DNA of 64,000 bases from Calcarisporiella thermophila CBS 279.70 (Eukaryota; Fungi; Calcarisporiellomycota), in the NCBI RefSeq assembly GCF_041956535.1, contig NW_027192193.1:281288-345287 (forward strand), written 5' to 3'. Below are positions 25,895 to 36,886 of the stretch, one piece after another. A model generated the notes under the pieces. The model was given only the letters and a program-made list of their open reading frames with translations, searched no databases and had not been told where the DNA came from. Made by a program: the position numbers and the translations under genes. Within the stretch, counting starts at the first letter, position 1. Each line of letters starts with the position of its first letter.

Positions 25895-27262
25895 ATGCGC
25901 AGTATAGGCGAGCTTGTTGTAGTGGCAATTAAAGGCCGCCATCTTCCCAACCGAGAGCTTATTGGCAAGCAATCGCCTTACATTGTTTTCACCCTTGGCA
26001 CTATCACTAAGCGAACACCTGCCGATCGACGCGGTGGACAAACTCCCACTTGGGATACCCAAGTTAATCTCCCAGTACCCGAAGGCAAATCTACCCTCCA
26101 AATACAGTGTTGGGACGAAGACAGAGGGAAAAATCACGATTTGATTGGAGAAACTGTGGTCGATATTACAAAAGCTCTTAAAGAAGGAGAGTGGGACGGT
26201 AAGCGTGAATTGGCTCATGATTAGCTGAAGAATGGCTAATGCCCTTCTTTTTCTTTAGATTGGTTCGATCTACAGTATAACAAGCGGCCAGCTGGCCAAA
26301 TCTATTTGGAACTTACATTTTATTCTGCCACCCCGCCGGCTAATCCCCCCACTCGACAGCAAAAACGCTTAGCAAACCCAATCCCCCCTCCACTCTCAAT
26401 GTCTGCGCCATATCCACCCGCTCCTACCCCTGCCTCTGCTACATCACCTTCCAACCACCACCCTCCTTCTAGACCACCTGTTCCCCCACCTCCGCCCCCC
26501 CAGCAGCAGGGAGCAGCCCGACCTCCTTCGACCAACCCCAGCTTCCCCTCTGGGCCTAACCCTCCGAAAAATCCGCAGCACCGTTACTCCATGCCACTGC
26601 CTTCTCCTGGCACTATTAACCCCATGCGACCTCTCTATCCACTCCACCCTGTTCCCGCGTCTCCTCCATCCTCAGTTTATCCCCCGCAGCCTATTAGCGC
26701 TAGTTCTCCCCCCCCCCAACCACAGACTCTGGGAAGCCCAACCGTCAACAGACCTCCCCGCCCACCTGGAGGATTTGTTCCCCCCACTCCTGCTCCTGTT
26801 CCCGCCCTGTTGACTCAGCCATATCGGCCACCACCGTCGCCTGCCGTGATGCCGGCGTATCCCTCCCAAATGTATCCCTCGCCCGAAGTAGTGATGGGCC
26901 AACCGCCCAACCAGTACCCAATGCAGATGCCTCACTCTGGTCATTTTGTGCAGCCAGGGGGATTCATCATCCCGCAGCGACATCCAGCCAATGCGGGCAT
27001 GTACATGCCTGATCCTCACTACGGCGGAGGCGCATATCCCCCTCATGCTCCACCTCAGGGTATGGGCTATCCAATGCCACCGCAGTCATCGCCTGCGGGA
27101 GGCTATCCACCTCCACCCCTGCAGCAACACCAGCCAATCTATCCTTCGTCTGGATATCCCCCGCAACCCTATGCAACCACGCCCGCACCTCCCCCCTCTC
27201 AACCGCCTCAAGGACAAGGAGGATATCCTCCTCTCTCACGCCATGCCTCTACCAAGTATTAA
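25895..27262 (+). CDS. C2-domain protein with Pro-rich tail (Fic1/Inn1-like architecture)
   Basis: GELVVVAIKGRHLPNRELIGKQSPY, GGQTPTWD, DLIGET, GEWD|DWFDL, GQIYLELTFY, then PxxP/YPP-rich tail; one intron. Confidence 0.85.
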
Positions 27263-27779
27263 CCAAATTTCTTCTCCTGTACTGTACTCAGTTTCTAAAG
27301 ACTCACCTATCTATTTCCATTTTTCTATATTTATTCTTTTCCCTATCGAATATTATTATCGTTTTTTTTCTCTTTTTTTTTTATTTTTATCTTTTTTGTG
27401 TGTAATAATGCTATTTCATCTTCACCTATTCTTATCTCTAACAGATTTATCACATGTTGTTATGGTTTAGATCTTGGTTTTCAGTGTTTTTCTTGGTTTT
27501 ACACTTCTCTCTTACTGTTCTATTGCCTATTAATACTATTCCGTATAATGAGCGAGCATGGAAAACTTTTCTGGGGTCACTATTCCCTTTTCTCGCATCT
27601 GCGGCGAAAAAAAAAGTGTTCCCATGCGGTTTTTCAATAAAGTAAAATATAAACAAGAAAATAAAGCGAAAAAAAAAAAATACAATACACTTCCAACCAT
27701 AGTAAACATAGGTATAATAAATAGTCGCCTAAATACAGAGGCATGAAGGAAGTACAAAAAGGCAAATACGAACAGCCCT

Positions 27780-28866
27780 CTATTCGTCACAAACCCGCAT
27801 TAGAAGTTCTCTAATATCCTCTCTTTCCATTCCGTACAGTAATGCCATTGAAACGAGGGAACGCACACCTTGAATCAAGAGAGGGCGAATTGCATCTCGC
27901 TGGTGTTCCAGACGATTATCGAGGCGTTTGTCAAAGTCGGCGAGAAGATGATGCATAGTGTTTATGTTAGTGTAAGATGGTTGAGCGGCAGTAGGATCGT
28001 ACGGCTGGTTTTTGGAACCAAGCGTGCGCTTAAGAAGACTGCTAAGCTCTGCTAAGGCCTCTGGAGATGGTTCATTATCCTCATCTGCCTCTGCCTCTGC
28101 CTCTGTCTCTGCTTCCCTCCGATTTCCATTATGCTGAGAGTCATGTTGAGGCGATATCCTTCCGGGAACCACGTCAACTTCGGCTATGGTATATTCGCTA
28201 CTTTCATTCAATGCATCGCGCGACTTGTCCACGCCTGTGTCTGCCGCCGTCGTGTCGTATTGATCCCAATAGGAATCTTCATCGTCCGGATCTGGCTCCC
28301 TTCGCGATGGCTCAGAAGTATGCCCTTCCACATTGTTCAAATAGCGCGACCAGTAAGAATCATCCTCTTCTTCATCTTCTGACACGGCCGCATTCTAATG
28401 AAAAATCATCACTTATCGATATCGGCGCATCTTTCAAGGATGATGTCTTTATTATTACCTTTGCAGTAGGATTGGTCACTTCAAACCCGCCTTCCCTTAC
28501 ATCCCAATATTTCCACTCGCCATCCTCGCCCGTTTCCTGCACACCTTCCTCCCACACCAGTATTAAACAGCACCCACCAATTTCAAAACGAGCCTGCTTT
28601 GTCTCTACATCGACGTTTACCTCCTTAGGTCCTTTCAACTCCACTTCCGCAGGCAAGTCTCTAATGATCTCTGGGGCACGATCAGGGTTCAGTTGGACAT
28701 GGGCAGCAAAATCGGAATCTTCTTTCGGACGGAGAAAAAAGAGTCGCTGGCGAATGGCTTTAGCAAGGAGTGGCGCGAGGAGAGGAAGAGATGAAGCCCG
28801 AATTGCTTGAAGAGCGCAAAGGGCAACAGCACGAGGATCTTTCAGATTAAGCTGACCGTCGGCCAT
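27780..28866 (-). CDS. Uncharacterised acidic protein with two D/E-D-S-Y-W motifs
   Basis: Intron 28395-28458 joins ORFs 28372..29037 and 27780..28385 in frame (PTAK|NAAVSEDEEEDDSYW). Confidence 0.7.
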
Positions 28867-29129
28867 TCTACTCCCTGGGTGATCAAGAAAAGCCCTGCTG
28901 GAATTAAGGAGGATTTGGGTAAGGAAGTCAAGAGTAGCGAGACGAAAAATTGCATAGTCCTTCACAATAGACGTCACGTGCACCTTCTTTGCGGAAGCAT
29001 TGTTTATTTTGCTCCAGCATCCTCTTGCTTGTCCCACGAGTCTCCGTCAATACATTGGCTTATCAACTGGCAGTGTGGGAGAAGACATATTCTCATTTGT
29101 GTGGAGTTCTGGTATTTGATTCAACGAGA

Positions 29130-29330
29130 AAAAGATTGAATATCGGTCCATGCATCGATAAACCGAAATGGAAAAGGTTTAATCACCAGGATCTTTACAG
29201 GCTCTTCGGTGGTCGATTCACTCGATATTTCGGTTCATGGAGAAGTTTACCCAACCCATTAATTCAAGTGGATGGTGTACCTGAATGTAAGGGCTTGAAA
29301 TAATTGATGCCTCCAAAGAATGGCTATCCA
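29130..29330 (+). mobile_element. Degenerate chromovirus (Ty3/gypsy) integrase C-terminus: GPF module and chromodomain start
   Basis: With frameshifts reads NIGPC...LYRL...IHSIF...PNPLIQVDGVPEC..EIIDAS, resembling GPF...YRL..IHPVF...PP.I.VDG..EYEVE.I.D. Confidence 0.45.
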
Positions 29331-29395: not shown

Positions 29396-30827
29396 GCGAC
29401 TAGAGCGCAAGGTTATATTTGAACTATATCATTTCATTACAGGCACATTATGTAGGGCTTGGAAACTGCAGAATATTTAGGATTACAGATTGAGATTATC
29501 CTGCCCCTGCAGAAAGGCCTTGGAGTGTTGGTGAATTAATGAAAACTGTTAAACTGTTAAACAAAACTCATTCTGTGCCGACAATTTGGTTCCGTCTGTA
29601 TCTCAAAAGCAATAAGTGGAGTGGGCTTTTATTGAAATAAAAAAAATCTTAAGATTAAAATTGGTAACCCAACTGTCAACAGTAGCGGCTCCATACATTG
29701 CTCCCCTTCTCGTCCCTGACAGATCATACTGACACCGGCATTAGTAAAGGGTATAATAATCACCAAGATTAAACTATTTTCTCTGCTTTAAAAAAACAGC
29801 ATAAATGACATTTAGGTTTCGACAAAATGACCCTAGAAACGATGGGCAAGCACTAATTTATTGTAGTAAAGTATCGCTCTTTTTAAACTAAAGCTAATAT
29901 ATCACAATAGTAAAAGCATAGACATTACAAGCGTATAAGCGTAATATAACAGGGCTATAGATACATAAAACAAAAGGGTCTCAAGATACCAACGCTATTA
30001 TCACAGAATGGCCATGTTGACCGGATCGATTGTCCCATCAAATAACACTTGTGAATGAGGCGATCTCCATCCTATATCTTCTCCAGATAATAGGAAATTT
30101 GTTTCACATTCAGCAGGTAGAACCGATTTTAGCGGTTTCGGCTCTTCGATCTTATAACCTTCGTCTGTAATCAATAGATACTTGTAAAGGGGAAGTGAAA
30201 ATACATCAATCACTTTCCAGTTAGATGACGCAGCTGGGAATCCTTCAAGTATGCGCCGCTTGGAATAGAATGCCAATATCCTCCTTTGTGCTGGAGTTTG
30301 CCACAGGTGAATGCGATTGCTAAGATGGAAATACCGCATTCATCCAGGGGCCTGAGAAAATATGATAAGCTCTAATGGACGGGTGTCTTCTACGGGAATC
30401 AAACCCGCAACCTAGATACTCAGCTCTAGGGCTATTGTTATTTAATTTCTTTACCTTGTTAGGAGAATCTTTATTAAAAAGTATCCTTTTTCGTTCTTAA
30501 TAAAGGAGATTGGATTATTGATATTTTTGAAAGTTGGAGTTCAAATACTAATTTCAGAGGAATAATGTGGAGGCTCCAATTAGATTTCAATTTAATATCA
30601 ACTAACACTTAATATTAATACTACGATACATACGGGCTATTGATGCAAATGAATTTTAGCGATGCGAAATGCAAAATTCTCATCAATTGACGGGGAGTTT
30701 CTTCATCTGCGGCGCTGGAAACCAGCGGATGGATCCAAGATGAAGAAAGCGGCGTAGAGCGAGGTGCCTTGCGGAGCCCCCTTACCTCACCGAATTTTGA
30801 CCAGGCAAGGTGCTGCCTAAGCGCTGC

Positions 30828-33800
30828 ATGATTATGGCTTTGGAGAGTTTCCCAATGACTTCAAATGGAAAAATCGATAAAGCCAAATTGAAGGAGACTT
30901 TACACCAAACTCCAAAGAGCCGCCAGCTACCTATTAATGACAAACAAAAACTAGTCATCAGCCTTATGTCATCCATTCTTAACATCGACGCTGAAATGAT
31001 TGATCTTAACTCCTCGTTCTTTGCACTTGGAGGCGATTCCATCTCTGCCATTGCATTGGTGTCTGCTTTCCGACGAAATGGTCTCTATCTAACCGTACCA
31101 CAGCTGTTCAAGGCAACCACTCCTGCAAGATTGGCTTCTATTGCTCAAGAGAAATCCGAAAAGCCTGCCTACTCCTCCGAAGCCGTAGTTGGCAACATCA
31201 CACTCGCTCCAATTCAGCACATGTTCTTTGAAAGAACTGGATTGGATCACTACAATCAATCCTATCTCGGATTTATATTCGGCTTCAGCCAACACATCGA
31301 ATTTGACCTCTACAAGAAAACAATTGTCAGCATTATCAAACACCATGACATGCTCAGAGCAAGCTACTCCAAAGGCAAAGACGGCACGTGGAGACAAACC
31401 GTTCTCGAGACGGACGCATTTGCAATCAATGCACACCACATCAGCTGTAGTAGCGAAGACGAACTCAAGGAACAAGTCAAGCAGCTAGCTTCAACCTTCG
31501 ATATTGAGAGAGGCTTGGTCCACTGTGCAGTTCTTTTCGAGGTATGTAAACCCTTGTGTATTGTATGAGGAAAAATGCCAATCTTCTTCATATATTGCTA
31601 TTGCAATTATCAAGATTGGTTATAAGCAGAGAGTATGCTTCATTGCTCATCCGCTTGTTGTTGATCGCCATTCGTTAAATATCATTTTGGAAGATCTCGA
31701 AGAGTCGTTGCAAGGAGGAGAGGCATACAAGACCAAGATGACAGCTTTCCGCGAATGGGTATCATGGCAAGAGAACCAGGCAACTTTGTTCGATCCCAAG
31801 GAATGGGAGCGGCATCTCAGTAGCATTGGCACGGCATTCATACCAAAGGGGAACGACCAAAGGTAACATTATTTTTTGCATAAAGGTGAAGTCTACAGCT
31901 CATATGATTTTTGGATTATATTCTAGCAAACATCAAGTGTCCTCGCACAAAATCAATGCGTCAGCATCCAACCTTCTTGGAAAAGCCATTGAAGTATACC
32001 GAACCAGCGCACATGAACTAATTCTGTGCGCTCTTCTACTGAGTTACTCGGAAGTAACAGGACAGACCATGCTTCCATTGAATATTGAAGGCAATGGGCG
32101 TAAACTCAGCGGCAGTTACCATGACTTCTCAAGGACAGTTGGTCAATTCACCACAATATTCCCCACTACTTTGTCCACTGCAAGCACTCATCCACAGGAG
32201 ACCATAATCAAGAATGTCAAGTCTCTTCTGCGTACAATCCCGAATGGGGGCGTGTCTTATGGAGCACTGAAATACCCTGCATCTTCAACCGAATCAACCA
32301 AAGCCATTAAAGAGCACTCTGCAAGTCCAATATATTTCAAGGCGTATGAAAATATTCTTACATTGAATAATGCATCCGCCTCCTTCATTTCCAATGAACA
32401 AAGCAATTCCCCCGATGGAGAGACGAGCTCTCATCTGAACATTGAATATGCCTTCGATACCAATGGGTGTCTTGATCTGATCTTCAGCTTTAACCATGCT
32501 TCATTCGATGCAAATATCCTGGATCAGTGGGGAAGCAAGTGGGTGAGAGCAATGGAGGGGTTCATCGAGCACTGCTGCGATCCCAACACTTCCGGTGACA
32601 TCGCAACTTGCGATTTCAGCCTATTGACGGATCCCTCTCTTGCCAGAGAGTTTGAGATGGTGCATCTGCCGTCTTTACAACTCAAGCCAAGAGATGTGGA
32701 AGATATCTATCCTGCAACTCCTCTGCAAACTAGCTTCATCTCGGCATTGGCTAGGAATCCTCGGTCATATATGGTTCCATCTATATATGATATCGTAGGC
32801 GAATTCGATGCACTACGTGTGAAAAAAGCATGGGCCAAAGTTGCTGCTGCAAACTCTATTCTTCGTACGGTATTTGTATCCACCACGGAAGGCGTCTTTC
32901 AAATTGTTCTCAGATCTGCTCCCGACGTGCCGGTAGAAACTGTTGAGTGGAACGTGGATGAATTTGACAAGCTTCAAAATGATTTTGTCCTTGCAGATAG
33001 TCGTCGCGGTTTCAGTTTGAACGATATTAAATTTACCAGATTCACAGTTGCTCGTTTCAAAGGCAGAGATCATTATCGACTCTTCATGACAATGCACCAC
33101 TCAATTATAGACGGGTCATCAGTACCACTACTTCTAAACGATGTGTTGAGTGCGTATTCAGGCGGAGAGATTGTGTATCGGCCTTCTTTCAAGACCCATG
33201 TTGAGTCTATTTTATCAATCAATGAAGATGAAGTCAAATCCTATTGGAAGTCAGTATTGGATGGAGCGACCGTTCCGGACAATTTAAATAGCCTAAATGA
33301 GGATGCTGATCTCGAAAATGCTGACACTGATTATAAGATATACAAGCTAAAGGTACAAGTTGATCAATTTTTGCACCACTGCAAAACCTTTGGTATTACC
33401 GTTTCCAACTATCTACGTGCTGTATGGGCAATTGTTCTGCGTCACTTTACGCGATGTGATGACGTTATCTTCGGGTGCATTATTAATGGTCGCGACGGAG
33501 ATATTAACGATTCTACAAGGTTTGAATGAACTCTCTCTGACAATATAATTCCAAAATAACATAAAAATTGTGACTTGTTTCTAATCTGTTTCCTAACAAC
33601 GATAGGATCATTGGAGCCCTAATCAATACCATACCCATCAGAACTGTGCTGAACGATAAAATGACAATAATCGATTTAGCGCAGGCAATGCAGGATTACC
33701 AAATCTCCTCAGCCCCTTACAGTCAAGTTTCGCTTTCAGATATCAAACACTGGACAGGCTTACCCTGGACTCAAGAGATGTTCCCCACCATCTTCTCTTA

Positions 33801-36800
33801 TCAATACTTCAAGAAAGCTGAAGAGGAAAGTGATATAAGCAAATTTGGATTCAAAATATCCGAAACGGAAGACGCTGTGGCTCTTATGGATCATTATACG
33901 ACTTCAGAGTATCCCCTGGCATTATCGATAAATGCACTAGATCCTCCTAGTGGTTATATTACCGCCAGCGCCCTGTTTAACACCGACAAGATTGGACCAA
34001 AAATGGTGGATAGAATGGTATACAAATTCCATGAGATACTTCAGCTGACTTTAAGCAGTTCCTTGCAAGAAATGTCAACTTTATTAAAACTTAACGAGCT
34101 AACCTCTATGGATGAGTCAACCCTTTCTAAGATTAGCTTTGGAAAGGATGCTCCGCTTGTATATCGATGCCTTCATCACGGATTCGAATCATATGCAAAA
34201 AGGCAGCCTGATGTCATTGCTGTTGAAGACTCAAATGGAGAAATAATCACCTATAGCGAATTGAACTCTTGTGCCAATGCCCTTGCTCATGCCTTGCGCA
34301 AACATGGAGTAGCTCCCGGGAAAACTGTTGGTCTAGTCATCAGGCGATCGAAAGAGATGCTTGTTGGCATTCTTGGCATCCTCAAGGCTGGAGGTGCTTA
34401 TGTCCCAATTGATGCATCATTCCCAAGGGATTGAATAGATTTTATCTTGAACGATGCTTCATGCAAAGTAGTTGTGACAATGAAAGCAAATAGTAGTTCA
34501 CTTCCCATCAACGTAGATCGTAGGATATTACTGATAGACGACTACATCAAGTCCAAATTAGAAGATATCATAAAACCCGAGGATCTCTCGTCAAGCGATG
34601 ACCCAGCCTATGTGGTATATACATCAGGAACAACGGGTAAACCCAAGGGAGTACCAATTCATCATGGGGGTGCTGTGAACTGTATTCAGGATCTTATTGG
34701 TAGACTTAATTCCGAACCAGGAACTCTTCAAGCGCAATTTATGGCTGTTGGATTTGATGGCGCAATTTCAGAAATATTCTCGTGTTTTACGAGCGGTGGT
34801 ACTCTTTTACTTCGCTCGGATGATGATTTACTGGGATCTCTGAACAAAGTACAATCTTTAATCATTACACCAACTGGACTACAACATATAGAACCAAAGG
34901 ATGTTCCGAATCTTCAAGTAGTGACATTGGTTGGTGAACCAGTGTCGCGAGCGCTAGCTGAAAAATGGCTACCTCATGTTAGGCTCTTTAATGGCTATGG
35001 TCCTACAGAAACAAAATTAGGCGCCAGTATACAAGAGCTCGAGAGTGGGAAGAAAATTGGGGTTGGTCGCCCCTTCAATAATATGTCATATTATGTACTA
35101 GATCACAATTTGAAGAAAGTTCCAATGGGTATTGTAGGTGAACTGTATATTGCTGGCGTTGGTGTTTCAAAGGGATATATTAATAGACCCAATCTCACTG
35201 AGGAGCGGTTTATTGAGAACCCTTTCATGCCAGGTAAAACAATGTACAAAACAGGGGACATGGTTCGGTGGAACCGAGATGGAAACTTGGAGATAATCGG
35301 AAGGACTGACGATCAAGTCAAATTAAATGGTTATCGCATAGAGCTCGACGAAGTTGCTTCTGTCATCAATGCACACCCTGGAGTCGAATTGGGGATTGCA
35401 CTAGTCAAAAACAACACGTTGATCGGATTTGTTTCGCCCGCCACCGTGGATACGGAAATGCTCAGAGACTCGCTATTTAATGTTCTCCCGGAGTACATGG
35501 TTCCTGCCAACATATTCGCCTTGGAGGGTATTCCGATGACCATCAATGGCAAGATTGATAAAACCAAATTGGAGGAGCTAGTTCATCGGGCTCAGAATCT
35601 TGACCTTCCTCTTACTGACATACAAACATTTGTTATAAATTGCTTTGCGTCAATTCTCAACATCGATGCCAACTCTATTAGTCTTCATACATCGTTCTTT
35701 GCTCTCGGGGGTGACTCGATTTCAGCCGTTGCACTAGTGTCTGCTCTCAGTAAACATGGATTTGATCTTACTCTGCCTCAAGTATTCCGAGCACTTACAC
35801 CTGCAAGGCTAGCAGCTATTATGCAAATGAGGCAGACTAATCCAATCCAAGTCTCGAAAAATGTGGTTCAATCAGATACTGATTTTAAACGCTTAATTAT
35901 TAATCTTATGGCGGCAGTTCTCAAGGTGGACACTAACCAAATTGACTATGATACCTCTTTCTTCGCTCTTGGTGGCGATTCAGTTTCCGCTCGCTCCCTA
36001 ATATCTGCATTCCGTAAACACGGTCTTCCTATTACCCTTAAACAGCTATTTAAATCACCTACTCCAGCGAGTTTAATAGCCGAACTATCTTCTTCTTCGG
36101 AAACCATCACCAATCCTTTAGCTAATCATATGAGTATCTCCGACAACCAATACGCTCCTTTGAAACCCATTCGAATACTTTGTCTGCATGGCTCAGTTAT
36201 GAATGGAGATATCATGCGATTAAAAATGGCCACATTAGAAAATGTTCTCAATTCGTCCGTAACTTTTCATTACATAGACGCATGCTTTAATTCGACCTCT
36301 CCTTGTAAGTGTCAAGGTTTTCTGTTTGAACAACTATTATTTTCTAATTATAACTGTTTTTTTGTCTTTAGTGACCCAGGAAGTGCGTAAATTTTATGAC
36401 GGGTCTCTTTTGACTTGGCTCTCAACAAACCCCCCACAGGGCACACACTTGAGACGAGCCATTCATCACGTTCTCTCTTATTTTACTATTAACGGAAGAG
36501 TTGACGGCCTCCTTGGGTTTAGCGAAGGGTCGTGTATAGTCGAATTACTTGATCGTATGGCTGAGAGTGGAGAAATTCAAAGGCAATGGGATCTAAGCAT
36601 TCATATATCTGGTGCTTTACTAAATTTAATTCCTGAAAACGACTTTCTGCCTGCCAGATTGGCAAATGCAAAGACTTGCCCTCGTATATCGATACCTTCG
36701 GTTCATTGCCTGAGCCCTAAAGATGGCAACTACCAATGCAATTTGGATATCCGAGAACGTTACGATCCTGAATTGAGCCATTCTCTCGAACACGATCTTG

Positions 36801-36886
36801 GCCACACCATCCCTCAAAGCTTCAAGACGGCCCATCGTATAGGATCGCTGATACTGGAGGCAGCAAAGAAATGCCAAAAATTTTGA
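30828..36886 (+). pseudogene. Nonribosomal peptide synthetase, 5'-truncated, one in-frame stop: (A end)-T-E(degenerate)-C-A-T-T-FSH1 hydrolase
   Basis: A10 NGKIDK at the start; three FFALGGDS carrier motifs; E-like motifs; C motifs YPATPLQ and HHSIIDG; A motifs YTSGTTGKPKG, NGYGPTE, YKTGD, GRTDDQVK; FSH1 motifs LCLHG, GFSEG, GHTIP. Introns 31542-31614, 31863-31926, 33520-33605 and 36305-36371 all preserve frame; TGA at 34432-34434. Confidence 0.9.

What the first reader, a model, noticed from the sequence alone, without database searches (positions are those of the whole stretch)
35600..36886. NRPS terminating in tandem T-T plus a fused FSH1/LovG-type serine hydrolase
Seen: two carrier domains, then IRILCLHGS..NG.I, DGLLGFSEG (Ser), SVHCLSPKD (Asp) and HDLGHTIP (His), joined in frame by intron 36305-36371; the triad is intact. 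Known: FSH1-family enzymes such as LovG act as free-standing release esterases for fungal reducing PKSs, while NRPSs normally end in TE, CT or R domains. Inference: a non-canonical, possibly undescribed peptide-release module.
Basis: partly seen in the sequence, partly recalled or inferred. Interest (0 to 1): 0.8.

Follow-up and report, generated by a model that had tools for sequence, protein, structure and literature searches.

The report
Broken NRPS copy ending in FSH1 hydrolase
The peptide-synthetase gene here really does end in two carrier domains fused to an FSH1-type serine hydrolase instead of the usual thioesterase, but this ending is common in this fungus and in chytrids, was noted in 2010, and this copy is truncated and carries a premature stop.

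Summary
Window 35600-36886 (+) encodes T-T followed by an FSH1 domain (Pfam PF03959). A 67-nt GTAAGT...AG phase-1 intron (36305-36371) splits the domain. Ser, Asp and His sit at 36521, 36722 and 36803. No Thioesterase HMM hit was found.

- **Organism and paralogues.** The genome is Calcarisporiella thermophila. It holds six more NRPS-linked copies of this domain. Three annotated paralogue proteins are spliced at the same intron position, and one copy has no intron.
- **Distribution.** The nearest relatives among 1.84 billion proteins are almost all NRPSs of 1.6-6.6 kaa ending C-A-T(-T)-FSH1, from many chytrid genera.
- **Prior description.** Bushley & Turgeon 2010 (PMC2823734) already noted this ending in a Batrachochytrium NRPS. 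I found no functional study.
- **State of this copy.** It is damaged. Homology to the paralogues begins abruptly near 30835, so the upstream modules are missing. An in-frame TGA (34432-34434) replaces a conserved Arg in the A domain, upstream of T-T-FSH1.

Low dN/dS (0.16-0.18) against the C6 paralogue and otherwise intact exons point to recent inactivation. In intact paralogues the domain most likely off-loads the peptide through an acyl-Ser or acyl-Cys intermediate; this is inferred, not shown. The scan's first readers noted the same ending (Cys variant) on two other pieces of this genome.

The parts
30456..30512 (.). Dispersed ~57-nt repeat about 330 nt upstream of the point where NRPS homology starts
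   Evidence: At least 40 copies at 84-96% identity across the genome
30828..31541 (+). Exon 1 of the remaining gene. It holds a remnant of the last A-domain motif (SNGKIDK), a T domain (about 30954-31136) and the start of an epimerase-like C domain. Homology to the paralogues begins near 30835.
   Evidence: Pfam PP-binding and Condensation. tblastn of paralogue modules finds no NRPS homology upstream anywhere in the window. The C6 paralogue carries a full A domain at the equivalent place.
31542..31614 (+). Intron 1 (73 nt, GTATGT...AG, phase 0)
   Evidence: Sequence; alignment to paralogue proteins is colinear across it
31615..31862 (+). Exon 2: epimerase-like domain core. Its motif reads AHPLVVD where several paralogue modules have HHLVVD (His-Pro at 31648-31653).
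   Evidence: AHC and ANS variants also occur in full-length paralogues.
31863..31926 (+). Intron 2 (64 nt, GTAACA...AG, phase 2)
31927..33519 (+). Exon 3: rest of the epimerase-like domain and the N-terminal two thirds of a C domain
   Evidence: Pfam Condensation E 5.8e-53, two stretches
33520..33605 (+). Intron 3 (86 nt, GTTTGA...AG, phase 2)
33606..36304 (+). Exon 4: end of the C domain, the A domain, T1, T2 and the N-terminal part of FSH1
   Evidence: Pfam
34432..34434 (+). In-frame TGA inside the A domain, at the Arg of FPRDRIEYIL that five aligned paralogue modules conserve
   Evidence: It is the only internal stop in the five-exon model.
35610..35820 (+). Carrier domain T1 (GGDS serine at 35716-35718)
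35893..36084 (+). Carrier domain T2 (GGDS serine at 35980-35982)
   Evidence: Pfam PP-binding best stretch, residues 483-546
36163..36304 (+). FSH1 domain, N-terminal part: first strand and the His-Gly oxyanion motif (36187-36192)
   Evidence: PF03959 profile 3-47, E 3.6e-7
36305..36371 (+). Intron 4 (67 nt, GTAAGT...TTTAG, phase 1), inside the FSH1 domain
   Evidence: A homologous phase-1 intron is used in annotated paralogue proteins P0001, P0002 and P0004.
36372..36886 (+). Exon 5: FSH1 domain C-terminal part, with Ser 36521-36523, Asp 36722-36724, His 36803-36805 and the stop at 36884-36886
   Evidence: PF03959 profile 70-208, E 3.4e-13; alignment with paralogues

Best explanation
Window 30828-36886 (+) is the 3' remnant of a multimodular NRPS of Calcarisporiella thermophila. 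It reads (A tail)-T-E-like-C-A-T-T-FSH1 over five exons.

The last domain is a genuine FSH1-family alpha/beta hydrolase fused in frame to the last carrier domain. The same ending is shared by at least six other NRPS loci in this genome and by many chytrid NRPSs. None of the 13 NRPS tails scanned carried a canonical TE.

In intact family members the FSH1 domain most likely takes the finished peptide from the phosphopantetheine arm of the last T domain onto its Ser (Cys in some paralogues). It would then release the peptide by hydrolysis or cyclisation, filling the role of a type I thioesterase. This step is inferred, not shown.

This copy lacks its upstream modules and carries a nonsense codon in the A domain ahead of T-T-FSH1. 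It is therefore most likely a recently inactivated paralogue, not a working release module.
For: - **Domain identity.** PF03959 is above its cut-off on both pieces, and no TE hit was found. An AlphaFold model of the 72%-identical paralogue domain has pLDDT 91. Its best PDB match is yeast FSH1 1ycd (TM 0.75), followed by acyl-protein thioesterases. An NRPS TE (SulM) appears only at rank 49.
- **Triad position.** In that model Ser103, Asp170 and His197 fall in the loops after strands 98-102, 162-166 and 188-192, where alpha/beta hydrolases usually carry their triad.
- **Fusion.** The FSH1 N-part shares an exon with T2. The intron position and phase are conserved in four paralogues and used in three annotated proteins. 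The C37 copy has no intron.
- **Family.** There are seven close copies in the genome, all at NRPS ends. The nearest relatives among 1.84 billion representatives are C-A-T(-T)-FSH1 proteins from more than 10 chytrid genera. In the tree nearly all carrier-linked domains group together (SH-aLRT 89), with the Calcarisporiella copies as one clade (94).
- **Nucleophile kept.** The elbow reads G-[FYLW]-[SC]-x-G. It is Ser in the window, C6 and C37 copies and Cys in the C25, C2 and C52 copies. The GHxIP His is invariant in the Calcarisporiella copies and kept in nearly all relatives aligned.
- **Damage.** NRPS homology starts near 30835, whereas the C6 paralogue has a complete A domain there. TGA replaces a conserved Arg. 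It is the only internal stop in 1,923 codons.
- **Recent loss.** dN/dS against C6 is 0.16-0.18 at dS ~0.95. The terminal branch is short (0.12 against 0.29 for C6).
Against: - No biochemical data exist for any NRPS-fused FSH1 domain. The release role rests on position, fold, conserved nucleophile and the stand-alone LovG precedent (my own knowledge of Xu et al. 2013, not read here).
- The TGA could be an assembly error or strain-specific.
- Chytrid enzymes that start with a T domain (T-C-A-T-FSH1) show that an NRPS without a loading A domain can be a normal gene. The 5' truncation alone therefore does not prove loss of function.
- The structure model is of the paralogue, not of the window's own spliced domain.
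Confidence: 0.72

Rival explanations
1. The window copy is a working gene. Either the TGA is a sequencing error or strain polymorphism, or a shortened T-E-C-A-T-T-FSH1 enzyme starting at ATG 30828 works with a partner that supplies the first residue in trans.
For: All four introns have in-frame GT...AG boundaries, and there is only one internal stop in 1,923 codons. dN/dS is 0.16-0.18 and the branch is short. Chytrid NRPSs naturally begin with a T domain (T-C-A-T-FSH1; PMC2823734).
Against: The TGA lies in colinear, conserved coding sequence, not in an intron. Homology breaks inside an A-domain motif next to dispersed repeats, which looks like a rearrangement and not a designed start. No protein identical to this exon was found among public models of 340-1083 aa.
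Confidence: 0.2
2. The fused FSH1 domain is not the release catalyst. It acts as an editing hydrolase that clears mis-loaded carrier domains, or as an acyltransferase passing the chain to another acceptor.
For: The closest structural neighbours after FSH1 are acyl-protein thioesterases and small carboxylesterases, which are general deacylases. From my own knowledge, LovG has also been credited with clearing stalled intermediates.
Against: None of the 13 NRPS tails examined carries any other terminal release domain. The domain always sits directly after the last T domain, where release domains sit. Editing thioesterases are normally free-standing.
Confidence: 0.12
3. The hydrolase is a separate downstream gene, and the fusion is an artefact of reading ORFs together.
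For: None beyond the presence of an intron inside the domain.
Against: FSH1 profile positions 3-47 are in the same uninterrupted ORF as T2. The C37 paralogue encodes T-FSH1 with no intron. Annotated proteins of 2.7-5.5 kaa contain the fusion.
Confidence: 0.02

Closest known systems
Batrachochytrium dendrobatidis NRPS BDEG_03514.1 (Bushley & Turgeon 2010, PMC2823734)
   Same: An NRPS whose last carrier domain is followed by an FSH1 (IPR005645) serine hydrolase domain. It starts with a T domain, as the remnant here does. Related chytrid proteins of the same build are among the nearest relatives of the window's domain.
   Different: It was described only as a domain architecture, with no function tested. 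It has a single module and a single terminal T. The window copy has tandem T-T, an epimerase-like domain, a truncation and a nonsense codon.
LovG and other free-standing FSH1-family esterases of fungal PKS clusters
   Same: Same Pfam family (PF03959). Ser-Asp-His hydrolase acting on a carrier-bound thioester (known role of LovG, from my own knowledge).
   Different: Those are separate proteins serving reducing PKSs in Dikarya. Here the domain is covalently fused after an NRPS T domain. In the tree it groups with other carrier-linked domains, apart from the Aspergillus and Dactylonectria stand-alone proteins.
Yeast Fsh1 (PDB 1ycd)
   Same: Best structural match to the model of the 72%-identical paralogue domain (TM 0.75). 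The GxSxG and GH motifs align.
   Different: About 17% identity. It is a stand-alone protein.
Type I thioesterase domains of NRPSs (PF00975, e.g. SulM TE, PDB 8w2d)
   Same: Alpha/beta hydrolase placed after the last T domain. Ser or Cys nucleophile variants exist in both.
   Different: No PF00975 hit even at E <= 1. The structural match is only at rank 49.
Dinoflagellate ZmaK-like PKS/NRPS hybrid with an FSH1 domain (PMC8283056)
   Same: A megasynthase that carries an FSH1 domain.
   Different: A PKS-rich hybrid from an unrelated lineage. No sequence comparison was made here.

Membership tests
FSH1 serine hydrolase family (PF03959) | Profile match above the curated cut-off | tested here: met
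   50.2 bits (exon 5) and 30.5 bits (end of exon 4) against a cut-off of 21. The two pieces cover profile 3-47 and 70-208.
FSH1 serine hydrolase family (PF03959) | Ser-Asp-His triad in GxSxG, post-strand Asp and GH motifs | tested here: met
   GFSEG, SPKD and GHTIP at 36521, 36722 and 36803. Asp and His are invariant in the six Calcarisporiella copies; the nucleophile is Ser or Cys. In the paralogue model they sit in the loops that follow three consecutive strands of the predicted sheet.
FSH1 serine hydrolase family (PF03959) | Fold closest to a solved FSH1 structure | tested here: met
   The model of P0001:492-710 (72% identical paralogue) has 1ycd as its top hit, TM 0.75. The window's own joined domain was not folded.
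FSH1 serine hydrolase family (PF03959) | Esterase or thioesterase activity | not testable with these tools
   Needs an enzyme assay.
NRPS type I thioesterase (PF00975) | Thioesterase profile match in the terminal domain | tested here: not met
   No hit at E <= 1 on either piece, and none in 13 related NRPS tails at E <= 0.001.
NRPS-FSH1 fusion family of chytrids and Calcarisporiella | C-A-T(-T) immediately followed by FSH1 in one reading frame | tested here: met
Functional NRPS gene | Uninterrupted reading frame from the first module to the release domain | tested here: not met
   In-frame TGA at 34432-34434. NRPS homology begins inside an A-domain tail near 30835.
Functional NRPS gene | Transcribed and spliced as modelled | not testable with these tools
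   No RNA run was listed.

The most novel reading that the evidence does not exclude
FSH1 domains are a distinct and biochemically uncharacterised class of NRPS chain-release domain. The class would have arisen by one old fusion and is shared by Chytridiomycota and Calcarisporiella. The Ser versus Cys nucleophile, and the single versus tandem T domain, may tune whether the peptide is hydrolysed or cyclised. NRPS domain sets that look only for TE, R and terminal C domains would not flag it (my own assumption, not checked).
Probability: 0.5. Interest if true: 0.6.

Novelty: new member of a known kind. Interest (0 to 1): 0.4.

Why it matters
If the FSH1 domain is the off-loading catalyst, most multimodular NRPSs of chytrids and of this thermophilic fungus use a release chemistry that nobody has assayed. 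These include the amphibian pathogens Batrachochytrium dendrobatidis (reported in PMC2823734) and B. salamandrivorans. That bears on predicting their products (linear or cyclic) and on genome-mining rules. The locus in this window is a decayed copy and not the one to study. The intact paralogues are better subjects: VTP21DRAFT_4724 on C2, VTP21DRAFT_8115 on C37 and VTP21DRAFT_9675 on C52.

Tried and rejected
- **RNA evidence.** The look-up of sequencing runs (kind rna) listed no run. Splicing, expression and the TGA could not be checked on reads, and read laying was not used.
- **Annotated model for this locus.** The word search with the 619-aa exon found no 100% match among proteins of 340-1083 aa. 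This says nothing about models of other lengths.
- **Missing modules further upstream.** tblastn of paralogue modules found no NRPS homology in the window outside 30783-36880. ORFs at 26240-29300 and the flanking minus-strand ORFs have no Pfam hit.
- **TGA inside an intron.** Rejected, because the alignment to paralogues is gapless across it.
- **Eroded epimerase motif as a sign of decay.** Rejected as specific evidence, because AHC and ANS variants occur in full-length paralogue proteins.
- **C6 paralogue upstream region.** Partly withheld (runs of N), so its integrity could not be judged.
- **Joined spliced protein.** The exons were handled separately, and the annotated 72% paralogue stood in for the fold. 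The joined model was used only inside one script to count its length and stops.

Full report
**1. Observation**

The + strand between 34435 and 36304 is one open frame. It encodes most of an adenylation domain, two PP-binding domains and the first ~45 residues of an FSH1 domain.
- Pfam gives AMP-binding E 5.8e-41 and PP-binding E 2.2e-31 with two stretches.
- FSH1 profile positions 3-47 score 30.5 bits when the 66-residue tail is scanned alone, against a cut-off of 21.
- A GTAAGT donor at 36305 and a TTTAG acceptor ending at 36371 bound a 67-nt phase-1 intron.
- The next exon (36372-36886) matches FSH1 profile 70-208 (E 3.4e-13, 50.2 bits).
The carrier serines are at 35716 and 35980, His-Gly at 36187-36192, Ser at 36521, Asp at 36722, His at 36803 and the stop at 36884.
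- No Thioesterase (PF00975) hit appears even at E <= 1.

**2. The fusion is real**

- The first strand and oxyanion motif of the hydrolase share an exon with T2. The fusion therefore does not depend on the intron.
- Four paralogues in the same genome have a phase-1 intron at the homologous codon: 61, 63, 59 and 67 nt.
- The public protein models of three of them (P0001, P0002, P0004) contain exactly the predicted junctions.
- A fifth paralogue (contig C37) encodes T-FSH1 with no intron (PF03959 profile 3-209 in one ORF, E 9.2e-29).

**3. Organism and family**

Cluster look-ups tie the paralogue proteins to Calcarisporiella thermophila. The locus tags are VTP21DRAFT_*, and the contig lengths equal those of G000 contigs C6, C2, C37 and C52.

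A six-frame search of the genome with exon 5 finds seven copies at 45-100% identity. All lie at the ends of NRPS genes. The genome also has ordinary free FSH1 genes, and three TE matches above the Pfam cut-off elsewhere.

A full scan of 1.84 billion representative proteins with exon 5 gave 59 hits.
- The long hits (1.6-6.6 kaa) all end C-A-T(-T)-FSH1.
- Nine of the ten shorter hits scanned (P0005-P0028, 347-974 aa) also carry a PP-binding or A-T portion in front of FSH1.
- The named hits come from Batrachochytrium salamandrivorans, Globomyces, Spizellomyces, Thoreauomyces, Geranomyces, Chytriomyces, Phlyctochytrium, Zopfochytrium, Quaeritorhiza, Polyrhizophydium, Dinochytrium and Terramyces.
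- One further locus reads T-C-A-T-FSH1.

In a quick ML tree the six Calcarisporiella copies form one clade (SH-aLRT 94). This clade sits inside a group (89) that holds all carrier-linked domains plus two short models. Free FSH1 proteins of Aspergillus, Dactylonectria and Basidiobolus lie outside it.

**4. What kind of hydrolase**

I modelled P0001:492-710, the annotated C6 paralogue domain (72% identical to the window's exon 5), with a 25-sequence alignment. The model has pLDDT 91.2 and pTM 0.89.
- Foldseek against the PDB puts yeast FSH1 (1ycd) first, with TM 0.75.
- Pseudomonas carboxylesterase and the acyl-protein thioesterases APT1/2 follow.
- An NRPS TE (SulM PCP-TE, 8w2d) appears only at rank 49.
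- Ser103 lies between strand 98-102 and helix 104-117. Asp170 follows strand 162-166, and His197 follows strand 188-192. These are the positions where alpha/beta hydrolases usually carry the triad.

Across paralogues and chytrid relatives the elbow is G-[FYLW]-[SC]-x-G. It is Ser in the window, C6 and C37 copies and Cys in the C25, C2 and C52 copies. The GHxIP His is invariant in the Calcarisporiella copies and kept in nearly all relatives aligned. A Ser/Cys exchange that keeps a nucleophile is what a domain working through an acyl-enzyme intermediate would show.

**5. Likely mechanism (inferred)**

The domain always follows the last carrier domain. None of the 13 related NRPS tails examined has a TE, R or terminal C domain. 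Free FSH1 enzymes such as LovG hydrolyse carrier-bound thioesters (my own knowledge).

The most likely role is therefore chain release. The peptidyl group would pass from phosphopantetheine to Ser or Cys, followed by hydrolysis or intramolecular attack. Sequence alone cannot say which of the two. The tandem T-T is shared with the C6 paralogue, and both carriers keep the GGDS serine.

**6. This copy is damaged**

Using paralogue proteins as guides, the gene resolves into five exons: 30828-31541, 31615-31862, 31927-33519, 33606-36304 and 36372-36886. Every intron begins with GT, ends with AG and keeps the frame. The model has 1,923 codons including the terminal stop, with exactly one internal stop.

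That stop, TGA at 34432-34434, replaces the Arg of FPRDRIEYIL. Five aligned paralogue modules conserve this Arg, and the alignment is gapless across it. The stop lies upstream of T-T-FSH1.

At the 5' end, similarity to paralogues begins near 30835, inside the last motif of an A domain.
- The C6 paralogue has a complete A domain at the matching place, and C-domain matches run from about 1,190,786 to 1,207,231 on that contig, ahead of its FSH1 end at about 1,219,470.
- No other NRPS homology exists in the window.
- A dispersed ~57-nt repeat (at least 40 copies) lies 330 nt upstream.

Against long-standing decay:
- dN/dS versus C6 is 0.16-0.18 at dS ~0.95.
- The window's branch is shorter than that of C6.

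The simplest reading is a partial duplicate, or a truncated gene, that stayed under selection for most of its history and was inactivated recently. An assembly error at the TGA cannot be excluded, because no sequencing run was listed.

**7. What is already known**

Full-text searches found two descriptive precedents.
- Bushley & Turgeon 2010 (PMC2823734) report a B. dendrobatidis NRPS, T-C-T-A-T followed by an FSH1 (IPR005645) domain.
- A dinoflagellate survey (PMC8283056) lists an FSH1 domain in a ZmaK-like PKS/NRPS hybrid.

No paper in the library tests the function of a fused FSH1 domain. All the public proteins looked up that carry an NRPS or carrier-linked FSH1 domain are labelled hypothetical, uncharacterized or only generically. 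The architecture is therefore described but uncharacterised. First readers of this scan also noted Cys-type copies on two other pieces of this genome.

**8. Verdict**

- The domain assignment and the fusion are correct.
- 'Undescribed' is not correct.
- The particular locus is a broken member of a family that deserves biochemical study in its intact members.

**9. Limits**

The exons were treated separately, and the annotated paralogue was used for the fold. Parts of several paralogue loci read N.

Noticed in passing
window 34432-34434: In-frame TGA at a conserved Arg in the adenylation domain. It is the only internal stop in the five-exon model.
   Followed up: yes
window 30456-30512 and 30129-30332: A ~57-nt repeat with at least 40 genomic copies, and a second ~200-nt repeat (about 68% identity, six other loci). 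Both lie just upstream of the point where NRPS homology starts.
   Followed up: partly
window 31648-31653: The epimerase-like domain reads AHPLVVD where several paralogue modules read HHLVVD. AHC and ANS variants occur in full-length paralogues, so this is a family trait and not decay.
   Followed up: partly
L009 (C25), L010 (C2), L012 (C52): Three paralogues have Cys instead of Ser at the nucleophile elbow (GFCEG, GYCQG, GFCQG). The C52 copy also has His-Ala instead of His-Gly in the oxyanion motif.
   Followed up: partly
L007/L013 (G000:C2:1439808-1440143): Another FSH1 copy with two in-frame TAG stops, at the end of a multimodular NRPS. It may be a second decayed member, 24 kb from an intact one.
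   Followed up: no
P0001, P0070, P0102 (G000 contig C6): The C6 paralogue is annotated as several separate short proteins. P0001 ends differently from the open frame (an extra predicted intron near the C-terminus). This looks like fragmented gene models or a broken gene.
   Followed up: no
one search hit list: Outside Calcarisporiella, the A-T portion is closest to chytrid NRPSs and to many NRPS fragments of the oomycete Aphanomyces (38-44% identity). It is closer to these than to the bacterial hits (31-39% identity); no Dikarya protein is among the 120 listed. This may reflect gene transfer among zoosporic lineages.
   Followed up: no
P0017 (Spizellomyces punctatus, 5027 aa): A weak APH phosphotransferase match (E 1e-4) follows the FSH1 domain, so the hydrolase is not always the last domain.
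   Followed up: no
G000:C30:29641-46203: One NRPS in this genome has a classical Thioesterase domain next to its C domains, so both kinds of ending coexist.
   Followed up: no
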